DNA from: Haplodiscus bocki
Taxonomy: Eukaryota
DNA: 64,000 nt
Direction of reading: 5' to 3'
Assembly (NCBI GenBank): GCA_965655095.1
Contig: OZ296659.1
Location: forward strand, 3,348,001 to 3,412,000
Below, in pieces: positions 1 through 55,382 of this stretch. The notes under the pieces are model-generated. The model saw only the letters and a list, made by a program, of their open reading frames with translations, was not told the origin of the DNA and did not search any database. The position numbers were made by a program, and so were the translations under genes. Each line of letters opens with the position of its first letter. Positions within the stretch are counted from its first letter, which is position 1.

Positions 1-572
1 AAAGATTTGATTTAGGAGCGGGTTTATCCATTACAGATGTGTACGTTCAAGTATATTGTTTCCATCCTTCTAATGAACAAGTTTGCATCGTGTAAATACC
101 AATTTAGGCACAAATAAAGACATTCTGGTAGACGTATCACCCAAGAGCCCATTTGGTTAAATCGATGAAACACAATTTATTGTTTACCACTTCAATAACT
201 GTATTCAAAGTAGTATGATTAGGCTAATATAAACAAGCCTGGAAGGCTAAAGTCGGAGTCGCCCGAAACGTACTTGCACCTTTTGAAGGCTCGTTGACTT
301 TGAGTGCTGGTAATGACTTCGGGAGATATATGAGGTGGTATCACGGTATTATTCTGAACCAAAATTCTAAATATCTTTCGAGAACAAGTGTAGTTTTTGG
401 ATCGTTTCCGTTATGAAATAGATAAAAAAATAGCCTTTACTGGGATCAAAATATGGCCTTGTAAATTTTGGAACACTGTTGCCCTGCCCACGAGACCACG
501 ATTGTACCATATGAACAAGAAAATCAATATAATAATACTAGTTGGCTCATTGTGGCAAAAAGCAAAATGAAC

Positions 573-1253
573 ATGTCGAATCCTAATGATAGTCAAATGG
601 GTGATGGTATCACAGGAGATTGTAACACAATGGGTCAACCAGGGCCGTGATACCAAGACAAAACGTTCATCATGCAAAGCAATGTGTGACAAGGTCAGCC
701 CCTGAACTCAGTCCCTGGATTGAATCAGAAGACGTCTTGTTATTGAAATTGATGAAAGTATCCAAAGATCGTTTAAAGCTCTGGTTCCTGACATCGGCAA
801 TTCCTTCAGGAATGAGTTTCACCGACTACTATTGGAAAGTTCTGACAAGGCTTTTCAAGCTGGGAACCAGGATGTGCTGGAGGAGATGAAAAGGTAGCTT
901 TAGCTAATGGTAGAAACTTTACAAATTTTCTCAGCAGCCGAAAGTTTGGCTATTCAACTGGAGTGATGATGTTGAAGTTTCTTTCCATGGAACTCTTGAA
1001 GTACTTTGAGAGAGAGAGAGAGCGAGCTAATGATATACCCAGAAAAGCCCTTAATGTTCCGAGGACGATAGATGTTGGCGTATCAGAAGATGGCATTTCA
1101 TTGGCACATTGATTACCCTCAAATATGCCAGTCTTTTCCATGACTGTGCGTTTGTCGCTCAGAATCGCCATATTTGATCTGCTTCAAGTTCAGGGGAAAT
1201 CCCCCGGCAACAACTGACTTCATTTCTGTGAAATATAATGGAATTTTACCCAA
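573..1253 (+). pseudogene. Representative amplified LINE ORF1 fragment (U1; an equivalent copy is in every monomer)
   Basis: Same frameshifted motifs as in U41, including DVGVSEDGISLAH*LPSNMP with CAT-TGA at 1107-1112. The fragment is truncated at the monomer junction (the ..SVKINEI.. position of most monomers, equivalent to ..YENITQ in the LINE body). Confidence 0.78.
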
Positions 1254-4200
1254 GTTTGAAAGAATAGATTTGATTTAGGAGCGGGTTTATCCATAACAGA
1301 TGTGTACGTTCAAGTATATTGTTTCCATCCTTCTAATGAACAAGTTTGCATCGTGTAAATACCAATTTAGGCACAAGTAAAGACATTCTGGTACACGTTT
1401 CACCTAAGAACCCTTTTGGTTAAATCGATGAAGCACAATTTATTGTTTACCACCTCAATAACTGTATTCAAATTAGTATGATATGGCTAATATAAACGAG
1501 CCTGGAAGGCTAAAGTCGGAGTCGCCCGAAACGCACTTGCACCTTTTGAAGGCTCGTTGACTTTGAGTGCTGGTAATGATTTCGGGAGATATATGAGGTG
1601 GTATTACGGTATTATTCTGAAACAAAATTCTAAATATCTTTCGAGAACAAGTGTAGTTTTTGGATCGTTTCCGTTATGAAATAGATAAAAAAATAGCCTT
1701 TACTGGGATCAAAATACGGCCTTGTGAATTTCGGAACACTGTTGCCCTGCCCACGAGACCACGATTGTACCATATGAACAAGAAAATCAATATAATAATA
1801 CTAGTTGGCTCATTGTGGCAAAAAGCAAAATAAACATGTCGAATCCTAATGATAGTCAAATGGGTGATGGTATCACAGGAGATTGTAACACAATGGGTCA
1901 ACCAGGGCCGTGATACCAAGACAAAACGTTCATCATGGAAAGCAATGTGTGACAAGGTCAGCCCCTGAACTCAGTCCCTGGATTGAATCAGAAGACGTCT
2001 TGTTATTGAAATTGATGAAAGTATCCAAAGATCGTTTGAAGCTCTGGTTTCTGACATCGGCAATTCCTTCAGGAGTGAGTTTCACCGACTTTTATTGGAA
2101 AGTTCTGACAAGGCTTTTCAAGCTGGGAACCAGGATGTGCTGAAGGAGATGAAAAGGGAGCTTTAGCTAATGGTAGAAACTTTACAAATTTTCTCAGCAG
2201 CCGAAAGTTTGGCTATTCAACTGGAGTGATGATGTTGAAGTTTCTTTCCATGGAACTCTTGAAGTAATTTGAGAGAGAGAGAGAGCGAGGTAATGATATA
2301 CCCAGAAAAGCCCTTAATGTTCCGAGGACGATAGATGTTGGCGTATCAGAAGATGGCATTTCATTGGCACATTGATTACCCTCAAATATGCCAGTCTTTT
2401 CCATCACTGTGCGTTTGTCGCTCAGAATCGCCATATTTGATCTGCTTCAAATTCAGGGGAAATCCCCCGGCAACAACTGACTTCACTTATGTGAAATATA
2501 ATGGAATTTTACCCAAGTTTGAAAGAATAGATTTGATTTAGGAGCGGGTTTATCCATTACAGATGTGTACGTTCAAGTATATTGTTTCCATCCTTCTAAT
2601 GAACAAGTTTGCATCGTGTAAATACCAATTTGGTCACAAGTAAAGACATTCTGGTACACGTTTCACCTAAGAACCCTTTTGGCTAAATCGATGAAGCACA
2701 ATTTAATGTTTACCACCTCAATAACTGTATTCAAATTAGTATGATATGGCTAATATAAACGAGCCTGGAAGGCTAAAGTCAGAGTCGCCCGAAACGTACT
2801 TGCACCTTTTGAAGGCTCGTTGACTTTCGAGTGCTGGTAATGATTTCGGGAGATATATGAGGTGGTATCACGGTATTATTCTGAACCAGAATTCTAAATA
2901 TCTTTCGAGAACAAGTGTAGTTTTTGGATCGTTTCCGTTATGAAATAGATGAAAAAATAGCCTTTACTGGGATCAAAATACGGCCTTGTAAATTTTGGAA
3001 CACTGTTGCCCTGCCCACGAGACCACGATTGTACCATATGAACAAGAAAATCAATATAATAAAACTAGTTGCCTCATTGTGGCAAAAAGCTAAATAAACA
3101 GTTTCAGATCTGGACTTGTTGATTATGTCGAATCCTAATGATAGTGAAATGGGTGATGGTATCACAGTAGATTGTAACACAATGGGTCAACCAGGGCCGT
3201 GATACCAAGACAAAACGTTCATCATGGAAAGCAATGTGTGACAAGGTCAGCCCCTGAACTCAGTCCCTGGATTGAATCAGAAGACGTCTTGTTATTGAAA
3301 TTGATGAAAGTATCCAAAGATCGTTTGAAGCTCTGGTTTCTGACATCGGCAATTCCTTCAGGAGTGAGTTTCACCGACTTTTATTGGAAAGTTCTGACAA
3401 GGCTTTTCAAGCTGGGAACCAGGATGTGCTGTAGGAGATGAAAAGGGAGCTTTAGCTAATGGTGGAAACTTTACAAATTTTCTCAGCAGCCGAAAGTTTG
3501 GTTATTCAACTGGAGTGATGATGTTGAAGTTTCTTCCCATGGAACTCTTGAAGTAATTTGAGAGAGAGAGAGAGCGAGCGAGCTAATGATATATCCAGAA
3601 AAGTCCTTAATGTTCCGAGGACGATAGATGTTGGCGTATCAGAAAATGGCATTTCATTTGCACATTGAATACCCTCAAATGTGCCAGTCTTTTCCATCAC
3701 TGTGCGTTTGTCGCTCAGAATCGCCATATTTGATCTGCTTCAAGTTCAGGGGAAATCCCCCGGCAACAACTGACTTCATTTCTGTGAAAATTAATGAAAT
3801 TTCACCCAAGTTTGAAAGAATAGATTTGATTTAGGAGCGGGTTTATCCATTACAGATGTGTACGTTCAAGTATATTGTTTGCATCCTTCTAATGAACAAG
3901 TTTGCATCGTGTAAATACCAATTTAGGCACAAATAAAGACATTCTGGTAGACGTATCACCTAAGAACCCATTTGGTTAAATCGATGCAACACAATTTATT
4001 GTTTACCACTTCAATAACTGTATTCAAAGTAGTATGATTAGGCTAATATAAACAAGCCTGGAAGGCTAAAGTCGGAGTCGCCCGAAACGTACTTGCACCT
4101 TTTGAAGGCTCGTTGACTTTGAGTGCTGGTAATGATTTCGGGAGATATATGAGGTGGTATCACGGTATTTTTCTGAACCAAAATTCTAAATATCTTTCGA

Positions 4201-6337
4201 GAACAAGTGTAGTTTTTGGATCGTTTCCGTTATGAAATAGATAAAAAAATAGCCTTTACTGGGATCAAAATACGGCCTTGTAAATTTTGGAACACTGTTG
4301 CCCTGCCCACGAGACCACGATTGTACCATATGAACAAGAAAATCAATATAATAATACTAGTTGGCTCATTGTGGCAAAAAGCAAAATAAACATGTCGAAT
4401 CCTAATGATAGTCAAATGGGTGATGGTATCACAGGAGATTGTAACACAATGGGTCAACCAGGGCCGTGATACCAAGACAAAACGTTCATCATGGAAAGCA
4501 ATGTGTGACAAGGTCAGCCCCTGAACTCAGTCCGTGGACTGAATCAGAAGACGTCTTGTTATTGAAATTGATGAAAGTATCCAAAGATCGTTTAAAGCTC
4601 TGGTTCCTGACATCGGCAATTCCTTCAGGAATGAGTTTCACCGACTACTATTGGAAAGTTCTGACAAGGCTTTTCAAGCTGGGAACCAGGATGTGCTGGA
4701 GGAGATGAAAAGGGAGCATTAGCTAATGGTAGAAACTTTACAAATTTTCTCAGCAGCCGAAAGTTTGGCTATTCAACTGGAGTGATGATGTTGAAGTTTC
4801 TTTCCATGCAACTCTTGAAGTAATTTGAGAGAGAGAGAGAGCGAGCTAATGATATACCCAGAAAAGCCCTTAATGTTCCGAGGACGATAGATGTTGGCGT
4901 ATCAGAAGATGGCATTTCATTGGCACATTGATTACCCTCAAATATGCCAGTCTTTTCCATCACTGTGCGTTTGTCGCTCAGAATCGTCATATTTGACCTG
5001 CTTCAAGTTCAGGGGAAATCCCCCGGCAACAACTGACTTCATTTCTGTGAAAATTAATGAAATTTCACCCAAGTTTGAAAGAATAGATTTGATTTAGGAG
5101 CGGGTTTATCCATTACAGATGTGTACGTTCAAGTATATTGTTTCCATCCTTCTAATGAACAAGTTTGCATCGTGTAAATACCAATTTAGGCACAAATAAA
5201 GACATTCTGGTAGACGTATCACCTAAGAACCCATTTGGTTAAATCGATGCAACACAATTTATTGTTTACCACTTCAATAACTGTATTCAAAGTAGTATGA
5301 TTAGGCTAATATAAACAAGCCTGGAAGGCTAAAGTCGGAGTCGCCCGAAACGTACTTGCACCTTTTGAAGGCTCGTTGACTTTGAGTGCCGGTAATGATT
5401 TCGGGAGATATATGAGGTGGTATCACGGTATTTTTCTGAACCAAAATTCTAAATATCTTTCGAGAACAAGTGTAGTTTTTGGATCGTTTCCGTTATGAAA
5501 TAGATAAAAAAATAGCCTTTACTGGGATCAAAATACGGCCTTGTAAATTTTGGAACACTGTTGCCCTGCCCACGAGACCACGATTGTACCATATGAACAA
5601 GAAAATCAATATAATAATACTAGTTGGCTCATTGTGGCAAAAAGCAAAATAAACATGTCGAATCCTAATGATAGTCAAATGGGTGATGGTATCACAGGAG
5701 ATTGTAACACAATGGGTCAACCAGGGCCGTGATACCAAGACAAAACGTTCATCATGGAAAGCAATGTGTGACAAGGTCAGCCCCTGAACTCAGTCCGTGG
5801 ACTGAATCAGAAGACGTCTTGTTATTGAAATTGATGAAAGTATCCAAAGATCGTTTAAAGCTCTGGTTCCTGACATCGGCAATTCCTTCAGGAATGAGTT
5901 TCACCGACTACTATTGGAAAGTTCTGACAAGGATTTTCAAGCTGGGAACCAGGATGTGCTGGAGGAGATGAAAAGGGAGCTTTAGCTAATGGTAGAAACT
6001 TTACAAATTTTCTCAGCAGCCGAAAGTTTGGCTATTCAACTGGAGTGATGATGTTGAAGTTTCTTTCCATGCAACTCTTGAAGTAATTTGAGAGAGAGAG
6101 AGAGAGCGAGCTAATGATATACCCAGAAAAGCCCTTAATGTTCCGAGGACGATAGATGTTGGCGTATCAGAAGATGGCATTTCATTGGCACATTGATTAC
6201 CCTCAAATATGCCAGTCTTTTCCACCACTGTGCGTTTGTCGCTCAGAATCGTCATATTTGACCTGCTTCAAGTTCAGGGGAAATCCCCCGGCAACAACTG
6301 ACTTCATTTCTGTGAAAATTAATGAAATTTCACCCAA

Positions 6338-9300
6338 GTTTGAAAGAATAGATTTGATTTAGGAGCGGGTTTATCCATTACAGATGTGTACGGTCAAGTA
6401 TATTGTTTCCATCCTTCTAATGAACAAGTTTGCATCGTGTAAATACCAATTTAGGCACAAATAAAGACATTCTGGTAGACGTATCACCTAAGAACCCATT
6501 TGGTTAAATCGATGAAACACAATTTATTGTTTACCACTTCAATAACTGTATTCAAAGTAGTATGATTAGGCTAATATAAACAAGCCTGGAAGGCTAAAGT
6601 CGGAGTCGCCCGAAACGTACTTGCACCTTTTGAAGGCTCGTTGACTTTGAGTGCTGGTAATGATTTCGGGAGATATATGAGGTGGTATCACGGTATTATT
6701 CTGAACCAGAATTCTAAATATCTTTCGAGAACAAGTGTAGTTTTTGGATCGTTTCCGTTATGAAATAGATGAAAAAATAGCCTTTACTGGGATCAAAATA
6801 CGGCCTTGTAAATTTTGGAACACTGTTGCCCTGCCCACGAGACCACGGTTGTACCATATGAACAAGAAAATCAATATAATAATACTAGTTGGCTCATTGT
6901 GGCAAAAAGCAAAATAAACATGTCGAATCCTAATGATAGTCAAATGGGTGATGGTATCACAGGAGATTGTAACACAATGGGTCAACCAGGGCCGTGATAC
7001 CAAGACAAAACGTTCATCATGGAAAGCAATGTGTGACAAGGTCAGCCCCTGAACTCAGTCCGTGGACTGAATCAGAAGACGTCTTGTTATTGAAATTGAT
7101 GAAAGTATCCAAAGATCGTTTAAAGCTCTGGTTCCTGACATCGGCAATTCCTTGAGGAATGAGTTTCACCGACTACTATTGGAAAGTTCTGACAAGGCTT
7201 TTCAAGCTGGGAACCAGGATGTGCTGGAGGAGATGAAAAGGGAGCTTTAGCTAATGGTAGAAACTTTACAAATTTTCTCAGCAGCCGAAAGTTTGGCTAT
7301 TCAACTGGAGTGATGATGTTGAAGTTTCTTTTCATGCAACTCTTGAAGTAATTTGAGAGAGAGAGAGAGCGAGCTAATGATATACCCAGAAAAGCCCTTA
7401 ATGTTCCGAGGACGATAGATGTTGGCGTATCAGAAGATGGCATTTCATTGGCACATTGATTACCCTCAAATATGCCAGTCTTTTCCATCACTGTGCGTTT
7501 GTCGCTCAGAATCGTCATATTTGATCTGCTTCAAGTTCAGGGGAAATCCCCCGGCAACAACTGACTTCATTTCTGTGAAAATTAATGAAATTTCACCCAA
7601 GTTTGAAAGAATAGATTTGATTTAGGAGCGGGTTTATCCATTACAGATGTGTACGTTCAAGTATACTGTTTCCATCCTTCTATTGAACAAGTTTGCATCG
7701 TGTAAATACCAATTTAGGCACAAATAAAGTCATTCTGGTACACGTATCACCTAAGAACCCATTTGGTTAAATCGATGAAACACAATTTATTGTTTACCAC
7801 TTCAATAACTGTATTCAAAGTAGTATGATTAGGCTAATATAAACAAGCCTGGAAGGCTAAAGTCGGAGTCGCCCGAAACGTACTTGCACCTTTTGAAGGC
7901 TCGTTGACTTTGAGTGCTGGTAATGATTTCGGGAGATATATGAGGTGGTATCACGGTATTATTCTGAACCAAAATTCTAAATATCTTTCGAGAACAAGTG
8001 TAGTTTTTGGATCGTTTCCGTTATGAAATAGATAAAAAAATAGCCTTTACTGGGATCAAAATACGGCCTTGTAAATTTTGGAACACTGTTGCCCTGCCCA
8101 CGAGACCACGATTGTACCATATGAACAAGAAAATCAATATAATAATACTAGTTGGCTCATTGTGGCAAAAAGCAAAATAAACATGTCGAATCCTAATGAT
8201 AGTCAAATGGGTGATGGTATCACAGGAGATTGTAACACAATGGGTCAACCAGGGCCGTGATACCAAGACAAAACGTTCATCATGGAAAGCAATGTGTGAC
8301 AAGGTCAGCCCCTGAACTCAGTCCGTGGACTGAATCAGAAGACGTCTTGTTATTGAAATTGATGAATGTATCCAAAGATCGTTTAAACCTCTGGTTCCTG
8401 ACATCGGCAATTCCTTCAGGAATGAGTTTCACCGACTACTATTGGAAAGTTCTGACAAGGTTATTCAAGCTGGGAGCCAGGATGTGCTGGAGGAGATGAA
8501 AAGGGAGCTTTAGCTAATGTTAGAAACTTTACAAATTTTCTCAGCAGCCGAAAGTTTGGCTATTCAACTGGAGTGATGATGTTGAAGTTTCTTTCCATGG
8601 AACTCTTGAAGTAATTTGAGAGAGAGAGAGAGAGCGAGCTAATGATTTACCCAGAAAAGCCCTTAATGTTCCGAGGACGATAGATGTTGGCGTATCAGAA
8701 GATGGCATTTCATTGGCACATTGATTACCCTCAAATATGCCAGTCTTTTCCATCACTGTGCGTTTGTCGCTCAGAATCGTCATATTTGATCTGCTTCAAG
8801 TTCAGGGGAAATCCCCCGGCAACAACTGACTTCATATCTGTGAAAATTAATGAAATTTCACCCAAGTTTGAAAGAATAGATTTGATTTAGGAGCGGGTTT
8901 ATCCATTACAGATGTGTACGTTCAAGTATATTGTTTCCATCCTTCTATTGAACAAGTTTGCATCGTGTAAATACCAATTTAGGCACAAATAAAGTCATTC
9001 TGGTACACGTATCACCTAAGAACCCATTTGGTTAAATCGATGAAACACAATTTATTGTTTACCACTTCAATAACTGTATTCAAAGTAGTATGATTAGGCT
9101 AATATAAACAAGCCTGGAAGGCTAAAGTCGGAGTCGCCCGAAACGCACTTGCACCTTTTGAAGGCTCGTTGACTTTGAGTGCTGGTAATGATTTCGGGAG
9201 ATATATGAGGTGGTATCACGGTATTATTCTGAACCAGAATTCTAAATATCTTTCGAGAACAAGTGTAGTTTTTGGATCGTTTCCGTTATGAAATAGATGA

Positions 9301-11800
9301 AAAAATAGCCTTTACTGGGATCAAAATACGGCCTTGTAAATTTTGGAACACTGTTGCCCTGCCCACGAGACCACGGTTGTACCATATGAACAAGAAAATC
9401 AATATAATAATACTAGTTGGCTCATTGTGGCAAAAAGCAAAATAAACATGTCGAATCCTAATGATAGTCAAATGGGTGATGGTATCACAGGAGATTGTAA
9501 CACAATGGGTCAACCAGGGCCGTGATACCAAGACAAAACGTTCATCATGGAAAGCAATGTGTGACAAGGTCAGCCCCTGAACTCAGTCCGTGGACTGAAT
9601 CAGAAGACGTCTTGTTATTGAAATTGATGAAAGTATCCAAAGATCGTTTAAAGCTCTGGTTCCTGACATCGGCAATTCCTTGAGGAATGAGTTTCACCGA
9701 CTACTATTGGAAAGTTCTGACAAGGCTTTTCAAGCTGGGAACCAGGATGTGCTGGAGGAGATGAAAAGGGAGCTTTAGCTAATGGTAGAAACTTTACAAA
9801 TTTTCTCAGCAGCCGAAAGTTTGGCTATTCAACTGGAGTGATGATGTTGAAGTTTCTTTCCATGCAACTCTTGAAGTAATTTGAGAGAGAGAGAGAGAGA
9901 GCGAGCTAATGATATACCCAGAAAAGCCCTTAATGTTCCGAGGACGATAGATGTTGGCGTATCAGAAGATGGCATTTCATTGGCACATTGATTACCCTCA
10001 AATATGCCAGTCTTTTCCATCACTGTGCGTTTGTCGCTCAGAATCGTCATATTTGATCTGCTTCAAGTTCAGGGGAAATCCCCCGGCAACAACTGACTTC
10101 ATTTCTGTGAAAATTAATGAAATTTCACCCAAGTTTGAAAGAATAGATTTGATTTAGGAGCGGGTTTATCCATTACAGATGTGTACGTTCAAGTATACTG
10201 TTTCCATCCTTCTATTGAACAAGTTTGCATCGTGTAAATACCAATTTAGGCACAAATAAAGTCATTCTGGTACACGTATCACCTAAGAACCCATTTGGTT
10301 AAATCGATGAAACACAATTTATTGTTTACCACTTCAATAACTGTATTCAAAGTAGTATGATTAGGCTAATATAAACAAGCCTGGAAGGCTAAAGTCGGAG
10401 TCGCCCGAAACGTACTTGCACCTTTTGAAGGCTCGTTGACTTTGAGTGCTGGTAATGATTTCGGGAGATATATGAGGTGGTATCACGGTATTATTCTGAA
10501 CCAAAATTCTAAATATCTTTCGAGAACAAGTGTAGTTTTTGGATCGTTTCCGTTATGAAATAGATAAAAAAATAGCCTTTACTGGGATCAAAATACGGCC
10601 TTGTAAGTTTTGGAACACTGTTGCCCTGCCCACGAGACCACGATTGTACCATATGAACAAGAAAATCAATATAATAATACTAGTTGGCTCATTGTGGCAA
10701 AAAGCAAAATAAACATGTCGAATCCTAATGATAGTCAAATGGGTGATGGTATCACAGGAGATTGTAACACAATGGGTCAACCAGGGCCGTGATACCAAGA
10801 CAAAACGTTCATCATGGAAAGCAATGTGTGACAAGGTCAGCCCCTGAACTCAGTCCGTGGACTGAATCAGAAGACGTCTTGTTATTGAAATTGATGAATG
10901 TATCCAAAGATCGTTTAAAGCTCTGGTTCCTGACATCGGCAATTCCTTCAGGAATGAGTTTCACCGACTACTATTGGAAAGTTCTGACAAGGTTATTCAA
11001 GCTGGGAACCAGGATGTGCTGGAGGAGATGAAAAGGGAGCTTTAGCTAATGTTAGAAACTTTACAAATTTTCTCAGCAGCCGAAAGTTTGGCTATTCAAC
11101 TGGAGTGATGATGTTGAAGTTTCTTTCCATGGAACTCTTGCAGTAATTTGAGAGAGAGAGAGAGAGCGAGCTAATGATTTACCCAGAAAAGCCCTTAATG
11201 TTCCGAGGACGATAGATGTTGGCGTATCAGAAGATGGCATTTCATTGGCACATTGATTACCCTAAAATATGCCAGTCTTTTCCATCACTGTGCGTTTGTC
11301 GCTCAGAATCGTCATATTTGATCTGCTTCAAGTTCAGGGGAAATCCCCCGGCAACAACTGACTTCATATCTGTGAAAATTAATGAAATTTCACCCAAGTT
11401 TGAAAGAATAGATTTGATTTAGGAGCGGGTTTATCCATTACAGATGTGTACGTTCAAGTATATTGTTTCCATCCTTCTATTGAACAAGTTTGCATCGTGT
11501 AAATACCAATTTAGGCACAAATAAAGTCATTCTGGTACACGTATCACCTAAGAACCCATTTGGTTAAATCGATGAAACACAATTTATTGTTTACCACTTC
11601 AATAACTGTATTCAAAGTAGTATGATTAGGCTAATATAAACAAGCCTGGAAGGCTAAAGTCGGAGTCGCCCGAAACGCACTTGCACCTTTTGAAGGCTCG
11701 TTGACTTTGAGTGCTGGTAATGATTTCGGGAGATATATGAGGTGGTATCACGGTATTATTCTGAACCAGAATTCTAAATATCTTTCGAGAACAAGTGTAG
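6338..11800 (+). repeat. Dimeric higher-order repeat (U6-U7 / U8-U9, extending into U10), period ~2530 bp
   Basis: U6 and U8 share gaccacggtt and cttgaggaat. U7 and U9 share gatgaatgta, ttattcaag, aatgttag, aatgatttac and ttcatatctg. ORF offsets are 6758->9286 and 8021->10553. Confidence 0.85.
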
Positions 11801-26659: not shown

Positions 26660-26692
<33 letters not shown>

Positions 26693-26921
26693 ATAATGAT
26701 ATATCCAGAAACGTCCTTAATGTTCCGAGGACGATAGATGTTGGCGTATCAGAAAATGGCATTTTGTTTGCACATTGAATACCCTCAAATATGCCAGTTT
26801 TTTTCCATCACTGTGCGTTTCTCGCTCAGAATCGCCATAGTAAATCTGCTTCAAGTTCAGGGAAAATCCCCCCGGCAACAACTGACTTCATTTCTGTGAA
26901 AATTAATGAAGTTTTACCCAA
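16555..26921 (+). repeat. Trimeric HOR (U14-16 / U17-19, ~3890 bp) changing to a dimeric step (U18-19 / U20-21, ~2590 bp)
   Basis: U14 and U17 share gttatgac, ggagggct, atgttctgg and ctgctgcaa. U15, U18 and U20 share caccgaag, gcctcgaagg, aatcaaaag and cgccagttg. U16, U19 and U21 share gagattctgg. ORF offsets are 18529->22420->25009. Confidence 0.8.
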
Positions 26922-33084: not shown

Positions 33085-33136
<52 letters not shown>

Positions 33137-46002: not shown

Positions 46003-46054
<52 letters not shown>

Positions 46055-49000
46055 CTAATGATATACCCAGAAAAGTCCTTAATGTTCCGAGGACGATAGA
46101 TGTTGGCGTATCAGAAGATGGCATTTCATTGGCACATTGATTACCCTCAAATATGCCAGTCTTTTCCATCACTGTGCGTTTGTCGCTCAGAATCGCCATT
46201 TTTGATCTGCTTCAAGTTCAGGGGAAATCCGCCGGCAACAACTGACTTCATTTCTGTGAAAATTAATGAAATTTTACCCAAGTTTGAAAGAATAGATTTG
46301 ATTTAGGAGCGGGTTTACCCATTACAGATGTGTACGTTCAAGTATATTGTTTCCATCCTTCTAATGAACAAGTTTGCATCGTGTAAATATCAATTTAGGC
46401 ACAAGTAATGACATTCTGGTACACGTATCACCTAAGAACCCATTTGGTTAAATCGATGAAGCACAATTTATTGTTTACCACCTCAATAACTGTTTTCAAA
46501 GTAGTATGATTAGGCTAATATAAACAAGCCTGGAAGGCTAAAGTCGGAGTCGCCCGAAACATACTTGCACCTTTTCAAGGCTCGTTGACTTTGAGTGCTG
46601 GTAATGATTTCGGGAGATATATGAGGTGGTATCACGGTATTATTCTGAACCAAAATTCTAAATATCTTTCGAGAACAAGTGTAGTTTTTGGATCGTTTCC
46701 GTTATGAAATGGTTAAAAAAATAGCCTTTACTGGGATCAAAATACGGCCTTGTAAATTTTGGAACAATGTTGCCCTGCCCACAAGACCACGATTGTACCA
46801 TATGAACAAGAAAATCAATATAATATTACTAGTTGCCTCATTGTGGCAAAAAGCTAAATAAACAGTTTCAGATCTGGACTTGTTGATGATGTCGAATCCT
46901 AATGATAGTCAAATGGGTGATGGTATCACAGTAGATTGTAACACAATGGGTCAACCAGGGCCGTGATACCAAGACAAAACGTTCATCATGGAAAGCAATG
47001 TGTGACAAGGTCAGCCCCTGAACTCAGTCCCTGGATTGAATCAGAAGACGTCTTGTTATTGAAATTAATGAAAGTATCCAAAGATCGTTTAAAGCTCTTT
47101 TTCCTGACATCGGCAATTCCTTCAGGAGTGAGTTTCACCGACTTTTAATGGAAAGTTCTGACAAGGTTATTCAAGCTGGGAACCAGGATGTGCTGGAGGA
47201 GATGAAAAGGGAGCTTTAGCTAATGGTAGAAACTTTACAAATTTTCTCAGCAGCCGAAACTTTGGTTATTCAACTGGAGTGATGATGTTGAAGTTTCTTT
47301 CCATGGAACTCTTGAAGTAATTTGAGAGAGAGAGAGAGCGAGCGAGCGAGCTAATGATATGTCCAGAAAAGTCCTTAATGTTCCGAGGACGATAGATGTT
47401 GGCGTATCAGAAGATGGCATTTCATTGGCACATTGATTACCCTCAAATATGCCAGTCTTTTCCATCACTGTGCGTTTGTCGCTCAGAATCGCCATTTTTG
47501 ATCTGCTTCAAGTTCAGGGGAAATCCGCCGGCAACAACTGACTTCATTTCTGTGAAAATTAATGAAATTTTACCCAAGTTTGAAAGAATAGATTTGATTT
47601 AGGAGCGGGTTTACCCATTACAGATGTGTACGTTCAAGTATATTGTTTCCATCCTTCTAATGAACAAGTTTGCATCGTGTAAATATCAATTTAGGCACAA
47701 GTAATGACATTCTGGTACACGTATCACCTAAGAACCCATTTGGTTAAATCGATGAAGCACAATTTATTGTTTACCACCTCAATAACTGTTTTCAAAGTAG
47801 TATGATTAGGCTAATATAAACAAGCCTGGAAGGCTAAAGTCGGAGTCGCCCGAAACATACTTGCACCTTTTCAAGGCTCGTTGACTTTGAGTGCTGGTAA
47901 TGATTTCGGGAGATATATGAGGTGGTATCACGGTATTATTCTGAACCAAAATTCTAAATATCTTTCGAGAACAAGTGTAGTTTTTGGATCGTTTCCGTTA
48001 TGAAATGGTTAAAAAAATAGCCTTTACTGGGATCAAAATACGGCCTTGTAAATTTTGGAACAATGTTGCCCTGCCCACAAGACCACGATTGTACCATATG
48101 AACAAGAAAATCAATATAATATTACTAGTTGCCTCATTGTGGCAAAAAGCTAAATAAACAGTTTCAGATCTGGACTTGTTGATGATGTCGAATCCTAATG
48201 ATAGTCAAATGGGTGATGGTATCACAGTAGATTGTAACACAATGGGTCAACCAGGGCCGTGATACCAAGACAAAACGTTCATCATGGAAAGCAATGTGTG
48301 ACAAGGTCAGCCCCTGAACTCAGTCCCTGGATTGAATCAGAAGACGTCTTGTTATTGAAATTAATGAAAGTATCCAAAGATCGTTTAAAGCTCTGGTTCC
48401 TGACATCGGCAATTCCTTCAGGAGTGAGTTTCACCGACTTTTAATGGAAAGTTCTGACAAGGTTATTCAAGCTGGGAACCAGGATGTGCTGGAGGAGATG
48501 AAAAGGGAGCTTTAGCTAATGGTAGAAACTTTACAAATTTTCTCAGCAGCCGAAACTTTGGTTATTCCACTGGAGTGATGATGTTGAAGTTTCTTTCCAT
48601 GGAACTCTTGAAGTAATTTGAGAGAGAGAGAGAGAGCGAGCGAGCGAGCTAATGATATGTCCAGAAAAGTCCTTAATGTTCCGAGGACGATAGATGTTGC
48701 CGTATCAGAAAATGGCATTTCATTTGCACATTGATTACCCTCAAATATGCCAGTCTTTTCCATCACTGTGCGTTTCTCGCTCAGAATCGCCATAGTTGAT
48801 CTGCTTCAAGTTCAGGGGAATTCCCCCCGGCAACAACTGACTTCATTTCTGTGAAAATTAATGAAGTTTTACCCAAGTTTGAAAGAATAGATTTGATTTA
48901 GGAGCGGGTTTATCCATTACAGATGTGTACGTTCAAGTATATTGTTTCCATCCTTCTAATGAACAAGTTTGCATCGTGTAAATACCAATTTTATACACAA

Positions 49001-49913
49001 GTAAGGACATTCTGGTACACGTATCACCTAAGAACCCATTTGGTTAAATCGATGAAGCACAATTTATTGTTTACCGCTTCAATAACTGTATCCAAAGTAG
49101 TATGATTAGGTTAATATAAACAAGCCTGGAAGGCTAAAGTCGGAGTCGCCCGAAAGGTTCTTGCACTTTTTCAAGGCTCGTTGAATTTGAGCTCTGGTAA
49201 TGATTTCGGGAGATATATGAGGTGGTATCACGGAATTATTCTGAACCAAAATTCTAAATATCTTTCGAGAACAAGTGTAGTTTTTAGATCGTTTCTGGTA
49301 TGAAATAGATGAAAAATAGACTTTACTGGGATTAAAATACGGCCTTGTACTTTTCGGAACGCTGTTGCGCTGCCCACAAGGTCACGATTGTACTATTTGA
49401 GCAAGAAAATCATTATAATACTACTAGTTGCCTCATTTTGGCAATAAGCTAAATAAACAGTTTCAGATCTGGACTTGTTGATGATTTCGAATCCTAATGA
49501 TAGTCAAAAGGGTGATAGTATCACAGGAGATTGTAACACAATGGGTCAACCAGGGCCGTGATACCAAGACAAAACGTTCATCATGGAAAGCAATGTGTGA
49601 CAAGGTCAGCCCCTGAACTCAGTCCCTGGATTGAATCAGAAGACGTCTTGTTATTGAAATTGATGAAAGTATCCAAAGATCGTTTAAAGCTCTGGTTCCA
49701 GACATCGGCACTTCCTTCAGGAATGAGTTTCACCGACTACTATTGGAAAGTTCTGACAAGGTTATTCAAGCTGGGAACCAGGATGTGCTGGAGGAGATGA
49801 AAAGGGAGCTTTAGCTAATGTTAGAAACTTTACAAATTTTCTCAGCAGCCGAAAATTTGGCTATTCAACTGGAGTGATGATGTTGAAGTTTCTTTCCATG
49901 GAACTCTTGAAGT

Positions 49914-49954
<41 letters not shown>

Positions 49955-52077
49955 TAATGATTTACCCAGAAAAGTCCTTAATGTTCCGAGGACGATAGAT
50001 GTTGGCGTATCAGAAGATGGCATTTCATTGGCACATTGATTACCCTCAAATATGCCAGTCTTTTCCATCACTGTGCGTTTGTCGCTCAGAATCGCCATAT
50101 TTGATCTGCTTCAAGTTCAGGTGAAATCCCCCGGCAACAACTGACTTCATTTCTGTGAAAATTAATGAAATTTTACCCAAATTTGAAAGAATAGATTTGA
50201 TTTAGGAGCGGGTTTATCCATTACAGATGTGTACGTTCAAGTATATTGTTTCCATCCTTCTAATGTACAAGTTTGCATCGTGTAATTACCAATTTAGGCA
50301 CAAATAAAGACATTCTGGTACACGTATCTCCTAAGAACCCATTTGGTTGAGTCGATGAAACACAATTTATTGTTTAACACTTCAATAACTGTATTCAAAG
50401 TAGTTTGATTAGGCTAATATAAACAAACCTGGAAGGCTAAAGTCGGAGTCGCCCGAAAGGTTCTTGCACTTTTTCAAGGCTCGTTGACTTTGAGTGCTGG
50501 TAATGATTTCGGGAGATATATGAGGTGGCATCAGGGAATTATTCTGAACCAAAATTCTAAATACCTTTCGAGAACAAGTGTAGTTTTTATATCATTTCTG
50601 GTATGAAATAGATGAAAAATAGACTTTACTGGGATTAAAATACGGCCTTGTACTTTTCGGAACGCTGTTGCGCTGCCCACAAGGCCACGATTGTACTATA
50701 TGAGCAAGAAAATCATTATAATACTACTAGTTGCCTCATTTTGGCAATAAGCTAAATAAACAGTTTCAGATCTGGACGTGTTGATGATGTCGAATCCTAA
50801 TGATAGTCAAATGGATGGTATCACAGTAGATTGTAACACGATGGGTCAACCAGGGCCGTGATACCAAGACAAAACGTTCATCATGGAAAGCAATGTGTGA
50901 CAAGGTCAGCCCCTGAACTCAGTCCCTGGATTGAATCAGAAGACGTCTTGTTATTGAAATTGATGAAAGTATCCAAAGATCGTTTAAAGCTCTGGTTCCA
51001 GACATCGGCACTTCCTTCAGGAATGAGTTTCACCGACTACTATTGGAAAGTTCTGACAAGGTTATTCAAGCTGGGAACCAGGATGTGCTGGAGGAGATGA
51101 AAAGGGAGCTTTAGCTAATGTTAGAAACTTTACAAATTTTCTCAGCAGCCGAAAGTTTGGCTATTCAACTGGAGTGGTGATGTTGAAGTTTCTTTCCATG
51201 GAACTCTTGAAGTAATTTGAGAGAGAGAGTGAGAGAGAGAGAGCGAGCTAATGATTTACCCAGAAAAGTCCTTAATGTTCCGAGGACGATAGATGTTGGC
51301 GTATCAGAAGATGGCATTTCATTGGCACATTGATTACCCTCAAATATGCCAGTCTTTTCCATCACTGTGCGTTTGTCGCTCAGAATCGCCATATTTGATC
51401 TGCTTCAAGTTCAGGTGAAATCCCCCGGCAACAACTGACTTCATTTCTGTGAAAATTAATGAAATTTTACCCAAATTTGAAAGAATAGATTTGATTTAGA
51501 AGCGGGTTTATCCATTACAGATGTGTACGTTCAAGTATATTGTTTCCATCCTTCTAATGAACAAGTTTGCATCGTGTAATTACCAATTTAGGCACAAATA
51601 AAGACATTCTGGTACACGTATCTCCTAAGAACCCATTTGGTTGAATCGATGAAACACAATTTATTGTTTAACACTTCAATAACTGTATTCAAAGTAGTTT
51701 GATTAGGCTAATATAAACAAACCTGGAAGGCTAAAGTCGGAGTCGCCCGAAAGGTTCTTGCACTTTTTCAAGGCTCGTTGACTTTGAGTGCTTGTAATGA
51801 TTTCGGGAGATATATGAGGTGGCATCAGGGAATTATTCTGAACCAAAATTCTAAATACCTTTCGAGAACAAGTGTAGTTTTTAGATCGTTTCCGGTATGA
51901 AATAGATGAAAAATAGACTTTACTGGGATTAAAATACGGCATTGTACTTTTTGGAATGCTGTTGCCCTGCCCACAAGGCCACGATTGTACTATATGAGCA
52001 AGAAAATCATTATTATACTACTAGTTGCCTCATTGTGGCAATAAGCTAAATAAACAGTTTCAGTTCTGAACTTGTTG

Positions 52078-52510
52078 ATGATGTCGAATCCTAATGATAG
52101 TCAAATGGGTGATAGTATCACAGTAGATTGTAACACGATGGGTCAACCAGGGCCGTGATACCAAGACAAAACGTTCATCATGGAAAGCAATGTGTGACAA
52201 GGTCAGCCCCTGAACTCAGTCCCTGGATTGAATCAGAAGACGTCTTGTTATTGAAATTGATGAAAGTATCCAAAGATCGTTTAAAGCTCTGGTTCCTGAC
52301 ATCGGCAATTCCATCAGGAATGAGTTTCACCGACTACTATTGGAAAGTTCTGACAAGGCTTTTCAAGCTGGGAACCAGGATGTGCTGGAGGAGATGAAAA
52401 GGGAGCTTTAGCTAATGGTAGAAACTTTACAAATTTTCTCAGCAGCCGAAACTTTGGTTATTCAACTGGAGTGATGATGTTGAAGTTTCTTTTCATGGAA
52501 CTCTTGAAGT

Positions 52511-52573
<63 letters not shown>

Positions 52574-52890
52574 TAATGATATACCCAGAAAAGTCCTTAA
52601 TGTTCCGAGGACGATAGATGTTGGCGTATCAGAAGATGGCAGTTCATTGGCACATTGATTACCTTCAAATATGCCAGTCTTTTCCATCACTGTGCGTTTC
52701 TCGCTCAGAATCGCCATAGTTGATCTGCTTCAAGTTCAGGGGAAATCCCCCCGGCAACAACTGACTTCATTTCTGAAAAAGTATGAGAACATTACCCAAC
52801 CCCGTGTGATTTTTTTAAAGCTGTTGAGAAATGATGACAATTGAATCTGTGTAGACTGGAGAAGGAACAGTCATCATTAAGAGAGTTTAA
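52078..52890 (+). pseudogene. LINE ORF1 remnant (coiled coil + RRM + CTD, L1-ORF1/Tnp22-like), spanning the array boundary
   Basis: Putative start MMSNPNDSQMG at 52078. A helical segment follows: RRLVIEIDESIQRSFKALVPDIGN...QDVLEEMKREL*LMVETLQIFSAAE. Then FNWSDDVEV..HGTLEV (cf. YNRRDNxxIxGLPE) and KVLNVPRTIDVGVSEDGSSLAH*LPSN...ITVRFSLRIA from ~52590 (cf. DISIAHRLP...IIVRF). Beyond the array come YENITQPRVIFLKLLRNDD (52782-52838, cf. IYEDLT..R) and IESV*TGEGTVIIK (52840-52881, cf. VWTxxGxI). Confidence 0.8.
52516..52568 (+). repeat. (GA)~26 microsatellite, the longest of 41 homologous (GA)n(GCGA)m tracts (one per monomer)
   Basis: Read directly. Other examples are (GA)7 at 1008-1022, ~(GA)21 at 33090-33131 and ~(GA)19 at 46008-46046. 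Confidence 0.97.
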
Positions 52891-52989
52891 ACTATCACTG
52901 CAACCGGAAGTGACCCAAAGAGCGAACTTCAAAATCTTTGAAATCTTCCTGTAACTTTGCTAACAAACCCGGATCTGCCTTCTATAGAG

Positions 52990-53620
52990 GTGCTTGTACA
53001 TAATATTTGTTCACTTGAAAGTCAATACTCAAATGTAGAACAATTTTAAGTAGCCTTGCATCTCCAGCGGCCAGATTACTCTGTTTTTTTTTAGAATTGT
53101 TTGGAGAGAAACCATGACACCAACAATTACTTGCTCGCGGGGTTTGCTGCAGCGATAGGCAAGAATAGACTATCAAATAACAGGAGGCTCGTTTTTTCAA
53201 TTGAGGTACGAAGCAAACTTTATCGGATTTGGTAACTTGGTTGCTACAATCAACCGAAGCTCTGATTGAAATTGCCAATTAGTACTTACTTGTCGTTAAT
53301 GTTGATGTAACACCGAGAACAAATGTTATGGCTTTTTTGTAGTCTTGGCAATCAACTTGAGTCCCTGACGAAATATGCATGCCCCATCTTTCTAACAGGT
53401 GACAGCAATATAGACATTCTGAAAACCAACACTTTAAGTAAGGAGTAGTTCAGTACTTTAGATGGCAATGGTTTTCAGCTGACCGAAAATTCGCCTACAC
53501 GCGTCGCCAGGAATTCTTCCTCCTTTATCAATTACATCATCACAAACTCTGTTCATTACATTATACAAGCACTCATTGACTGCTCCGCAGACCACTATAA
53601 GTTTATACTCCAATTTTTGC
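52990..53620 (+). pseudogene. LINE ORF2 apurinic-like endonuclease (APE) domain remnant
   Basis: VLVHNICSL at 52990 (cf. LNIRSL), HDTNNYLLAGF..NR, IFLTGDSNIDILK (GD at 53398; cf. GDFNIDLLK), NSPTRV (PTR at 53494), FINYIITN (53527; cf. IDHIxTN) and SADHY (53584-53598; cf. SDH). Order and spacing are canonical. Confidence 0.9.
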
Positions 53621-54179
53621 GCCTAAAAAAGGATGACCACCCTACAGAAAACATCACCGACCTTGTGCAATTTCTTTATATTGACCTATTTTTGTGGAAA
53701 TTGAGAAATAATCTGGAATTGACCTCATGCTTGAAAATGTAAATTTTGTTTTTGATCATTGCCATTCACTATATACGGAAGCTATTAGGTTTTTTGCGAC
53801 GAGCATGCGACGAGTAACATAACCGAATCACGCAAATGCCGAATGGTTTCATCGGGAGTAGAAGTCTCTTATAGTATTTTATTTGAACTACAAATTGTGG
53901 TTGAAGGACAATTGAATTTAGGAAAAGTTTCATTTTGCAGCGAAAAGGAGCGGAAAAAAAAGTATCACGTTGGTCATGAGACGTTTTTTTGAACCAAGTT
54001 TGCGGATTGTATTGAAGTTTCGATACAAGTTTCACAGTTAGTAAAAGTGATGGGTAAATGTTCAACAACTACACATTGTAGTCAACTGACCACATTGTAG
54101 TTATGGGCGAAAATGGCAGTGCTGCAAATGTCTCCAATGAGCACTCTTGCTACCCAATCCATGTGTTTTTCACAACTAA

Positions 54180-55315
54180 TAAATATGAATGACGCAGTGA
54201 TTCGACAGCTTAAAAACAGACTTTCATCTGGATCAGACGACATAAGCAACGTAGTCCTCAAAATCTGGGACGACGTATTTGCATTCTATTTAGCTGAGCT
54301 TATCAACAGAACTGGTTTTTTCCCTATGAGCTACATTTTTAGTAAGTTTTTTCACTTCATAATGGTGGATGCTACCGTGATGTGAGTTACCAATTTTTGT
54401 ATTAAATGCTTGAAATATTTTTTAAACGTGTAATTCATAGTGGAATTGACAACTTTTTGGGAAAATTTAATCTTCTTCATGGTTAGCAATTTGTTTTCCG
54501 AAAAAAAACATGCACCGGCCAAATCGACAGATATATTAGCACGTGCTAGTGGAATTGTAATTTGTAGTTTTTCTTGATCTCATGAATATGATACTCTATT
54601 TCGTCTTATTTGGCTACAGAAACCGGAAGCTCATGGACTCAGAGGCGTTGCGAATGATAGCTCACAAATTACTTAACGGGGATAGAATGCAATGTGTTGT
54701 AATCAATATTTATAATTCTGAGTGGATGCGTTTGTTTACTGGCTTTCCCCAATGTTTTGCCCCGGAACCTTTGTTTTTTAATTTTCATAAATGATATCGT
54801 CCGGGTTGTTCGAAACTCTCAGATTTATTCGCGGATTGTTCAATATTTTAAGTACTACCTCATCACATTTGAGCTTCCATACGGTCCTAAGTAGAATGTG
54901 ATTGGTTAAAATGGAATAATTGATCAATGAATGCAGACTTATAGCTTTGTTAATTCAAAGTTAGATTTTATTCTATCATAGAAACTGTCCGAAATGACTC
55001 AACGATAAAATATTGTGAGTCTTCAAGACGTTTGAATGTTTTGATCAATAGAAAACTGATATTTTGCCTTTGAATATTTTCAAAACTAAAGTTGCTAGGC
55101 ATTTTAGAATCGTAGCTAAAATGAGGCACTGACTTCTCAAAAGTGTTCTTTTAAATTATTGTTCATATTACAATAAACCGAAATTCAGTATGCGATTCTC
55201 GTCTATGATTGCAGTACCTTTTCAATAGTTAGCCAATTCTTCTCATGCAAAGAAAGTTTATTCGATTAGTTTTTTTGATGGTAAATTTGAAAGTATTTCA
55301 ACAGTTTTGGATTAC
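54180..55315 (+). pseudogene. LINE ORF2 reverse transcriptase and C-terminal region remnant
   Basis: IRQLKNRLSSGSDDISNVVLK...LAELINRTGFFP (inside ORF 54113-54385), QFVFR at 54487 (cf. QFGFR), FLDL at 54570, RMQCVVIN..SEW...TGFPQCFAPEPLFF..NDI at ~54680-54797 (cf. [20 protein letters not shown]), LFAD at 54825 (cf. LFADD), and KVARHFRIVAKMRH*LLKSVLLNY...KFESIST at ~55085-55305. Confidence 0.92.
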
Positions 55316-55327
55316 ATCAAAATTCAG

Positions 55328-55382
55328 TATATATAATATAAATAAATATAAATAAATAATATTTATAAATAAATAAATAATA
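55328..55382 (+). repeat. AT-only (TAAA/TA)n low-complexity tract where recognisable LINE ORF2 homology stops
   Basis: tatatataatataaataaatataaataaataatatttataaataaataaataata. Confidence 0.85.

What the first reader, a model, noticed from the sequence alone, without database searches (positions are those of the whole stretch)
1..55315. A >52-kb macrosatellite built from the 5' end/ORF1 of a LINE and still attached to its parent element
Seen: about half of each 1.3-kb monomer translates, across frameshifts, to LINE ORF1 motifs. The final monomer continues without a break into the missing ORF1 C-terminus, then endonuclease, then RT. Known: TE-derived satellites exist, and LINE 5'UTRs carry internal promoters. 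Inference: a segment of upstream flank/5'UTR plus most of ORF1 duplicated in situ and expanded to at least 41 copies, so the birthplace of the satellite is preserved. A kilobase-scale ORF1-containing monomer with its donor LINE body at the array edge is the most unusual feature here. Whether it is undescribed cannot be judged without a search.
Basis: partly seen in the sequence, partly recalled or inferred. Interest (0 to 1): 0.85.

Follow-up and report, generated by a model that had tools for sequence, protein, structure and literature searches.

The report
Satellite built from LINE 5' end
A single 74-kb block of about 57 head-to-tail copies of a 1.29-kb unit arose when the front part of a dead jumping gene (a LINE) and about 550 bases of its upstream neighbourhood were duplicated on the spot; it is a clear but ordinary example of how satellite DNA is born from a transposon.

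Summary
The array runs from 21.6 kb left of the window (C12:3326383) to window 52775: 74.4 kb, 57 full monomers of 1263-1316 bp plus two partial ones, mean identity 95.9%.

Each monomer has four parts:
- 717 bp of the 5' end of an old, dead LINE (ORF1 coiled coil and RRM);
- a 30-bp diverged patch;
- 236 bp of unique DNA;
- 311 bp of the 5' part of an interspersed repeat, "R".

The last copy runs on into the same LINE: an ORF1 stub, then EN, RT and a 3' end at about 55800, not 55315. The 3' remainder of R lies directly behind the LINE. So the LINE inserted into R, and the non-LINE half of the monomer is true flank, not 5'UTR.

Independent LINE copies on two other chromosomes are collinear from the monomer part into EN/RT. 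An intact relative has an ORF1 with the human L1 ORF1p fold, although Pfam does not recognise it.

The founding junction occurs only at this locus. The left end of the array is abrupt and does not grade into flank as predicted.

All monomers share stop codons, so the array is non-coding. This is a new member of a known kind (TE-derived satellite). The scan's notes (not checked here) report similar kilobase-unit TE-derived satellites elsewhere in this genome.

The parts
1..52775 (+). The part of the tandem array inside the window (40 full monomers plus partial copies at both ends). The whole array is C12:3326383-3400775, 74.4 kb, 57 full monomers.
50704..51997 (+). Representative monomer (m57, 1294 bp), the last full one.
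50733..51449 (+). LINE-derived part of the monomer: the element's 5' terminus (GCCTCATT...) and ORF1 N-terminus, coiled coil and RRM (to about aa 280 of the 360-aa intact relative). Stop codons are shared by all 57 monomers.
   Evidence: DNA homology to L015/L016. tblastn E 4e-21. Profile hit 50938-51456, E 5e-21. Shared stops. 5' terminus alignment.
51450..51479 (+). Founding junction: a 30-nt patch that still resembles the LINE's next 29 nt (52776-52804) but only at about 65%.
   Evidence: Alignment. Anchored score 9 against a null mean of 1.2, p about 0.002. Junction word found only in this array.
51480..51715 (+). Unique, non-LINE, non-R part of the monomer (236 bp), taken to be original flank upstream of R.
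   Evidence: No match to any LINE copy, to the right flank or to R. No ORF1 C-terminal signal.
51716..52026 (+). 5' part (about 311 bp) of an interspersed repeat R (about 386 bp, at least 330 candidate copies). It begins at R's own terminus and is cut off by the LINE 5' end.
52027..55801 (+). The parent LINE: full length at both ends but dead, about 3.78 kb against about 4.55 kb for the intact relative L040. Its first 749 bp are the last repeat copy.
   Evidence: Collinear with L015/L016 from 52026 to 55811. 5' terminus conserved in L015, L016 and L040. 3' end just after AATAAA.
52078..52877 (+). ORF1 remnant of the parent LINE (frameshifted; reaches aa about 301, profile position 222 of 269). 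The C-terminal domain is mostly missing.
52516..52572 (+). (GA)28 microsatellite inside ORF1, between coiled coil and RRM. The longest (GA) run per monomer is 10-42 nt.
52969..53664 (+). Apurinic-type endonuclease remnant (ORF2 aa 28-262 of the intact relative).
   Evidence: tblastn E 1e-25. The relative's ORF2 carries Exo_endo_phos / Exo_endo_phos_2.
53957..54779 (+). Reverse transcriptase remnant (ORF2 aa 370-681).
   Evidence: tblastn E 2e-13 and lower-scoring pieces. RVT_1 in the relative, E 7e-35.
55088..55334 (+). Remnant of the ORF2 C-terminal region (aa 791-877).
55775..55780 (+). AATAAA, conserved in all four aligned LINE copies. Homology among the copies ends a few bases later.
55802..55893 (+). 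3' remainder of repeat R (R query positions 379-466). It resumes where the upstream R piece stops, directly behind the LINE.
   Evidence: Local alignment score 23.5 against shuffles (mean 12.6, max 18.5). Three-way alignment.

Best explanation
An old LINE inserted into a copy of the interspersed repeat R. The LINE is an APE-type element (apurinic/apyrimidinic-type endonuclease plus reverse transcriptase) whose ORF1 has the L1 ORF1p architecture. After the element was already dead, a 1.29-kb segment was duplicated in tandem at this one locus. The segment comprised about 236 bp of unique flank, the 311-bp 5' piece of R and the first about 720-750 bp of the LINE (5' terminus, ORF1 coiled coil and RRM). 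The duplication probably used a short diverged patch of similarity between the flank and ORF1. Unequal exchange and gene conversion then grew and homogenised the array to about 57 copies (74 kb), and blocks of 2-7 monomers were still being copied recently. The rightmost copy is the LINE's own 5' end and continues into EN-RT. The left edge was later lost or rearranged. The array is non-coding and most likely neutral satellite DNA. Shown: the anatomy, the homology, the single locus and the shared stops. Inferred: the order of events, the recombination mechanism and the neutrality.
For: Array structure and extent. Monomer phase 41-757 is homologous to the 5' part of independent LINE copies that run on collinearly into EN/RT. 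ORF1 and ORF2 protein similarity to a natural intact relative (L040). The ORF1 of the family is L1-ORF1p-like: profile against PDB 2ykp/2yko E 2e-7; AF2 model with pLDDT 76 showing a long helix, an RRM and a C-terminal domain; the Foldseek top 10 are all L1 ORF1p, E 7e-7 to 5e-5. The LINE 5' terminus GCCT(A/C)(A/C)TTG is shared by the window, L015, L016 and L040, each with unrelated DNA upstream. R is split by the LINE, its 5' part inside the monomer and its 3' part directly after the LINE 3' end. The junction word (up to 2 mismatches) occurs 54 times in the genome; 50 are in the array and the other 4 are at the level of the reversed-pattern control. All 40 scored DNA hits of 62 candidates lie in the array. 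Stops at 51112, 51178, 51184, 51331 and 51436 are shared by 57 of 57 monomers, and no open stretch exceeds 145 codons. The last copy is up to 98% identical to interior monomers right up to the breakpoint. Unitigs from two samples span the array/LINE junction and the monomer junction, and word depth is roughly 10-40 times higher in the monomer.
Against: The left end does not show the expected seamless flank. It starts at phase 1073, inside R, beside unrelated unique DNA, so a second event has to be assumed. The 30-nt patch of about 65% similarity after the breakpoint has more than one possible cause. The first about 28 nt of the LINE also resemble R, so the exact R/LINE boundary is uncertain by up to 30 nt (a target-site duplication or microhomology). 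The R 3' match is short (92 nt). Pfam finds no Transposase_22 in the ORF1. All read data come from one study, possibly the source of the assembly, and only as contigs. No RNA or chromatin data bear on function.
Confidence: 0.85

Rival explanations
1. Same origin, different amplification route. The 1.29-kb segment was excised as a circle by recombination between the two similar patches and copied by rolling-circle replication. The concatemer was then put back: by homology at the LINE side and by end joining at the other side.
For: The right end is seamless, while the left end is abrupt at an arbitrary phase next to unique DNA. A homeologous patch sits exactly at the junction. The scan's notes list several other kilobase-unit satellites made of arbitrary TE or viral gene pieces in this genome (untested).
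Against: A later deletion at the left edge explains the asymmetry equally well. Nested duplicated blocks of 2-7 monomers and the decay of identity with distance are what unequal exchange produces. There is no direct trace of circles.
Confidence: 0.12
2. The non-ORF1 half of the monomer is the LINE's own 5'UTR. The array would then be a giant version of the promoter monomers of mouse L1 and could move with the element.
For: One repeat copy (L011) seemed to run about 28 nt into the LINE 5' end.
Against: Four LINE copies share the same 5' terminus with unrelated DNA upstream. R is an independent repeat with its own termini and at least 330 candidate copies. Of the three R copies whose surroundings were examined (L010, L011 and the copy in L016), none is joined to a LINE. 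R's other half lies behind the LINE. The junction is unique to this locus.
Confidence: 0.02
3. Double insertion of the LINE into the same target gave a head-to-tail dimer that expanded (McGurk and Barbash model, PMC5932611).
For: This is a known route from non-LTR elements to satellites.
Against: The monomer has no LINE 3' part. Instead, 547 bp of non-LINE DNA lie between successive LINE 5' pieces. The junction is ORF1-to-flank, not 3' end-to-5' end.
Confidence: 0.01
4. Assembly artefact: a few copies were inflated by the assembler.
For: Long arrays are error-prone. Only one assembly and one study are available.
Against: Monomers differ by 0.1-7% in a structured way, with length variants and nested duplicated blocks. 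There are no Ns. Word depth of unitigs is roughly 10-40 times higher in the monomer than in the adjacent LINE body in three runs.
Confidence: 0.03

Closest known systems
LINE-derived satellites: common cetacean satellite (L1 3'UTR), PROsat and Pvc20 (L1 ORF2), chicken HinfI/SCR1 (CR1 3'UTR + ORF2), as tabulated in PMC9659126
   Same: A fragment of a non-LTR retrotransposon has become the unit of a tandem array and has lost its coding capacity.
   Different: Here the fragment is the 5' end / ORF1, which that table does not list for LINEs. The unit is a composite with 547 bp of non-TE flank. The array is a single 74-kb locus, and the donor element still sits at its edge.
Tandem TE dimers from double insertion that seed satellites (McGurk and Barbash 2018, PMC5932611)
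   Same: A non-LTR element supplies the raw material of a young tandem array.
   Different: The junction here is ORF1-to-flank, not element 3' end to 5' end, so the founding event was a segmental tandem duplication rather than a second insertion.
Promoter monomers of mouse L1 5'UTRs (A, Tf, Gf; PMC3600994)
   Same: Tandem repeats at the 5' end of a LINE.
   Different: Mouse monomers are about 200 bp, lie inside the element upstream of ORF1 and travel with it. Here the unit is 1.29 kb, includes host flank and ORF1, and exists at one locus only.
Human L1 ORF1p (PDB 2ykp/2yko/2ykq, 2w7a, 2ldy)
   Same: The ORF1 of this LINE family has the same layout of coiled coil, RRM and C-terminal domain, with sequence-profile and fold matches.
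   Different: Identity is 17-20% (Foldseek). Pfam Transposase_22 does not detect it. Its ORF2 is short (984 aa).
Kilobase-unit TE-derived satellite in the same genome (scan note s1-381246: 1,063-bp unit from a recombinase-like transposon gene)
   Same: Same genome, similar unit size and array size, and a decayed internal TE gene fragment as the unit.
   Different: A different TE class. That note does not report a donor element at the array edge. I did not test it.

Membership tests
Macrosatellite / tandem satellite array | Head-to-tail copies of one unit, many copies, no spacer | tested here: met
   57 full units of 1263-1316 bp tile 74.4 kb without gaps.
TE-derived satellite | The unit is homologous to an internal part of a dispersed transposable element | tested here: met
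   DNA homology to LINE copies on C5 and C8. Protein similarity to the intact ORF1 at E 4e-21 and to the profile at E 5e-21.
TE-derived satellite | The unit consists of TE sequence only | tested here: not met
   547 of 1294 bp are flank: 236 bp unique plus 311 bp of another repeat R.
APE-type LINE (non-LTR retrotransposon) | ORF2 with an Exo_endo_phos endonuclease and an RVT_1 reverse transcriptase | tested here: met
   The intact relative L040 has RVT_1 at E 7e-35, Exo_endo_phos_2 at 3e-7 and Exo_endo_phos at 9e-6. The window copy matches it at E 1e-25 (EN) and 2e-13 (RT). Pfam on the window's own stop-free pieces found nothing.
L1 ORF1p / Pfam Transposase_22 | Match to PF02994 (or PF17489/PF17490) at the gathering score | tested here: not met
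   No hit for L040 ORF1; only Tnp_22_trimer at E 0.21. None of the 13 relatives hits it.
L1 ORF1p / Pfam Transposase_22 | Architecture of coiled coil + RRM + C-terminal domain | tested here: met
   PDB profile hit to 2ykp at E 2e-7 over coiled coil and RRM. AF2 model with H42-125, then a beta-alpha-beta-beta-alpha unit, then a C-terminal sheet and helices. The Foldseek top 10 are all L1 ORF1p.
Double-insertion TE tandem (McGurk-Barbash) | The junction joins the TE 3' end to the TE 5' end | tested here: not met
   The junction joins ORF1 (about aa 280) to non-LINE flank. No LINE 3' sequence is in the unit.
LINE 5'UTR promoter monomers (mouse L1 type) | The repeat unit lies within the element and is present in other transposed copies | tested here: not met
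   Other copies begin at the same 5' terminus with unrelated DNA upstream. The junction is unique to this locus.
Functional satellite (centromere, piRNA cluster) | Chromatin marks, small RNAs or conservation across species | not testable with these tools
   No RNA run holds the stretch, and the genome has no relatives in the collection.

The most novel reading that the evidence does not exclude
The locus may be a readable record of how this genome makes kilobase-unit satellites. It has a founding junction at a 30-nt diverged similarity patch, a seamless homology-side edge and an abrupt far edge. That combination would fit excision of a 1.3-kb circle, rolling-circle copying and re-insertion. 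The scan notes several other about 1-1.4-kb-unit arrays built from arbitrary TE or viral gene pieces in the same genome. Together these would point to a recurrent, size-selective amplification process rather than chance unequal crossing-over.
Probability: 0.12. Interest if true: 0.55.

Novelty: new member of a known kind. Interest (0 to 1): 0.3.

Why it matters
Satellites that derive from transposons are well known, but their founding event is rarely visible. Here the donor LINE, the founding breakpoint, and the older repeat that the LINE split are all still readable at one locus. That gives an unambiguous order of events: R, then LINE insertion, then LINE decay, then tandem duplication of flank plus ORF1, then expansion. 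It makes a good teaching or benchmark case for models of satellite birth and for repeat annotation pipelines, which would otherwise 'LINE fragments'. It does not reveal a new kind of element or function.

Tried and rejected
- TRF cannot see a 1.3-kb period.
- Pfam on ten stop-free pieces of the window found no LINE domain, only chance-level hits; the pieces are too short and decayed.
I used a natural intact relative (L040) and a profile of natural proteins, and read the window frames with X at stops.
- Single-sequence AF2 of ORF1 was useless (pLDDT 39). The 13-sequence alignment worked.
- I tested whether the 236-bp unique piece is the ORF1 C-terminal domain or any other LINE part. It has no profile hit, and no DNA match to the LINE body, the right flank or other LINE copies.
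- I tested whether R is the LINE's 3' tail. It has no match in L040, L015 or L016 LINE regions.
- No tRNA or Rfam family was found in the monomer, the flank or R.
- ORFs in the right flank have no Pfam domain.
- ORF2 homologues carry no informative names, so the LINE clade stays unresolved. ESM Atlas leads (Baculo_FP_2nd, Transposase_22 clusters, scores 0.87-0.90) are too weak to use.
- The 28 kb left of the array holds no further monomer. The left flank has no LINE or R, and its last 400 bp are essentially unique.
- The two edges of the array are only marginally closer to each other than to the interior (95.6% against 95.1% and 94.4%), so I make no claim of 'ancestral edge monomers'.
- A metagenome scan for the junction word found nothing.
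- Reads were available only as contigs and none as RNA, so nothing can be said on expression or exact copy number.


Full report
**1. The observation**

The window is G000:C12:3348001-3412000 of a 1.5-Gb assembly. Distances between repeated 16-mers peak at 1263-1300 bp. Repeated words fill the window up to about 52.7 kb and then stop. BLAST of one unit tiles window 3-52775 head to tail. TRF missed the array only because its longest period is 500.

Fetching the DNA to the left showed that the array goes on for another 21.6 kb and starts at C12:3326383. The whole array is 74,393 bp. It has 57 full monomers of 1263-1316 bp, a 233-bp partial copy on the left and a 778-bp partial copy on the right.

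Mean pairwise identity is 95.9% (range 93.0-99.9%). Identity falls slowly with distance, from 97.0% at lag 1 to 95.6% at lag 21. There are nested, recently duplicated blocks:
- a 7-monomer block, m40-46 against m47-53, with pairs at 99.3-99.9%;
- further pairs at spacings of 1 to 7 monomers, at 99.1-99.9%.

A run of short variants (1263-1267 bp) carries a deletion of about 24-30 bp.

**2. What the monomer is made of**

Searching the genome with the EN-RT body and with the monomer found the same two distant loci, on C5 and C8. When these were fetched (L015, L016), both aligned collinearly with window 52026-55811. The alignment runs from inside the last repeat copy through the whole downstream element. 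The same 5' stretch aligns to every monomer, at 62-65% DNA identity.

A protein search with an endonuclease piece then found a related intact element (L040, minus strand). It has a 360-aa ORF1 and a 984-aa ORF2. The ORF2 carries RVT_1, Exo_endo_phos_2 and Exo_endo_phos.

tblastn of these natural proteins gave the following:

| Query | Target | Result |
|---|---|---|
| ORF1 aa 115-270 | each monomer tested | E 4e-21 |
| ORF1 aa 115-301 | last copy, 52253-52838 | E 1e-26 |
| ORF2 aa 28-262 (EN) | 52969-53664 | E 1e-25 |
| ORF2 aa 370-681 (RT) | 53957-54779 | E 2e-13 and weaker pieces |
| ORF2 aa 791-877 | 55088-55334 | E 0.002 to 4e-5 |

A profile of 13 natural ORF1 relatives hits the monomer at 50938-51456 (E 5e-21). 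It hits the last copy up to 52877. It hits nothing in the rest of the monomer.

**3. What kind of ORF1**

Pfam finds nothing in the intact ORF1 or in its relatives. The other tests agree on an L1 ORF1p type:
- The sequence hits human L1 ORF1p in the PDB at E 1e-5, and the profile hits it at E 2e-7, over the end of the coiled coil and the RRM.
- An AlphaFold model built with the alignment (pLDDT 76) shows an 84-residue helix, an RRM-like unit and a C-terminal sheet/helix domain.
- The ten best Foldseek matches are all L1 ORF1p structures, at E 7e-7 to 5e-5.

So the fold and layout are those of L1 ORF1p, but the Pfam membership criterion is not met. The monomer carries the N-terminus, coiled coil and RRM (to about aa 280) and none of the C-terminal domain. 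The breakpoint lies in the linker between RRM and C-terminal domain. The clade of the LINE could not be named, because its homologues carry no informative names.

**4. Flank or 5'UTR?**

The window element, L015, L016 and L040 all begin with GCCT(A/C)(A/C)TTG. L016 and L040 are 95% identical over the first 38 nt. The DNA upstream of that point is unrelated in each copy. Relatives' ORF1 proteins start MINLLN, which is encoded from about nt 12 of the element. The family therefore has almost no 5'UTR. The start-codon assignment is an inference.

The remaining 547 bp of the monomer are not LINE. The last 311 bp (51716-52026) match an interspersed repeat that I call R. R is about 386 bp long, has at least 330 candidate copies at 67-82% identity, and has its own recurrent termini. 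The match starts exactly at R's terminus.

The missing 3' part of R (query positions 379-466) lies at window 55802-55893. That is one base after the point where the four LINE copies cease to be alike, just behind AATAAA at 55775-55780. The alignment score is 23.5, against a shuffle mean of 12.6 and maximum of 18.5.

So the LINE inserted into an R copy, and the repeat unit took along true upstream flank. About 20-28 nt at the R/LINE 5' boundary resemble both R and the LINE terminus. They could be a target-site duplication or junction microhomology. The boundary is uncertain by that much.

**5. The founding junction**

The last copy is up to 98% identical to interior monomers right up to 52775. 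The next 29-30 nt (52776-52804 against monomer 51450-51479) are still alike, but only at about 65%. After that, similarity is gone. Against random 45-mers of the same window this anchored similarity has p of about 0.002.

I read the patch as a short diverged similarity between the flank and ORF1 that mediated the first unequal exchange. The alternative is a patch at the very edge that homogenisation never reached. That predicts a gradual decline of identity, which is not seen. Neither reading is proven.

**6. One locus only**

A 22-nt junction word, with up to 2 mismatches, occurs 54 times in the genome. Fifty occurrences lie in the array. The other four are single two-mismatch hits, which is the level of the reversed-pattern control. 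All 40 scored DNA matches of 62 candidates for the junction-spanning query lie in the array. A metagenome scan found nothing.

**7. The left end**

Instead the array starts abruptly at monomer phase 1073, about 50 nt inside R. It lies beside DNA with no similarity to the monomer, to R or to the LINE. The last 400 bp of that DNA are essentially unique in the genome.

In the monomers R is intact across this point. The left edge is therefore secondary: a deletion, or an end-joining event. Only the right edge preserves the birthplace.

**8. Coding and function**

Five stops in the ORF1-homologous frame are shared by all 57 monomers, and no monomer has an open stretch longer than 145 codons. The LINE was therefore already dead when it was amplified, or the defects were spread by homogenisation.

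The monomers are only about 57-65% identical in DNA to other LINE copies, including the intact family. No tRNA or Rfam family is present. No RNA run holds the stretch. I conclude that this is neutral satellite DNA in a subterminal position: 3.3-3.4 Mb from the start of a 79-Mb sequence. This conclusion is an inference.

**9. Is it an artefact?**

There are no Ns, and the variation among monomers is structured. Unitigs from two samples of one study span both the monomer junction and the array/LINE junction. Their word depth is roughly 10-40 times higher in the monomer than in the LINE body. The tool warns that depth is not copy number, so I use this only as consistency. The study may be the source of the assembly.

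**10. Comparison and novelty**

TE-derived satellites are a known kind. A review table lists LINE-derived cases from ORF2 or 3'UTR: the cetacean satellite, PROsat, Pvc20 and chicken HinfI (PMC9659126). The double-insertion route is described in PMC5932611. I found no ORF1-plus-flank case with the donor retained, but the search was limited.

The scan's notes report other kilobase-unit satellites made from TE or viral gene fragments in this same genome, and call it a coral. I did not test either point.

Verdict: a new member of a known kind, with an unusually legible history and modest interest.

After no more genomic DNA could be fetched.

Noticed in passing
L011:1381-1766 (G000:C3:84068582-84068967), window 51716-52026 and 55802-55893: An interspersed repeat 'R' of about 386 bp with recurrent termini and at least 330 candidate copies at 67-82% identity. 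It has no tRNA or Rfam match and its class is unknown.
   Followed up: partly
L011:1890-2200 (G000:C3:84069091-84069401): A very abundant repeat of about 300 bp (1353 candidates, copies 87-91% identical). At some loci an about 148-bp sub-unit is arrayed in tandem (for example C2:40993709-40995034).
   Followed up: no
L040:2471-6490 (G000:C8:27085470-27089489), minus strand: An apparently intact LINE of the related young family: ORF1 360 aa and ORF2 984 aa, overlapping, with a (TTTC)n tail. Many copies at 55-91% amino-acid identity lie on other chromosomes. ORF1 seems to start about 12 nt from the 5' end (MINLLN in relatives).
   Followed up: partly
window 52516-52572: The (GA)n microsatellite inside ORF1 has grown to 28 units in the edge copy. 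In the other monomers its longest run varies from 10 to 42 nt, so a microsatellite is evolving inside a macrosatellite.
   Followed up: partly
window 62438-62787 and G000:C12:3324879-3325231: The left and right flanks of the array share one about 350-bp repeat at 74% identity in the same orientation. It is probably just another interspersed repeat.
   Followed up: no
L015:6293-7566 (G000:C5): The C5 copy of the old LINE has about 1.1 kb of extra DNA between ORF1 and EN compared with the window and C8 copies, probably a nested insertion.
   Followed up: no
window 573-13188: A run of short monomer variants (1263-1267 bp) shares a deletion of about 24-30 bp near the LINE 5' end (monomer phase 70-95), marking a locally expanded subfamily.
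   Followed up: partly
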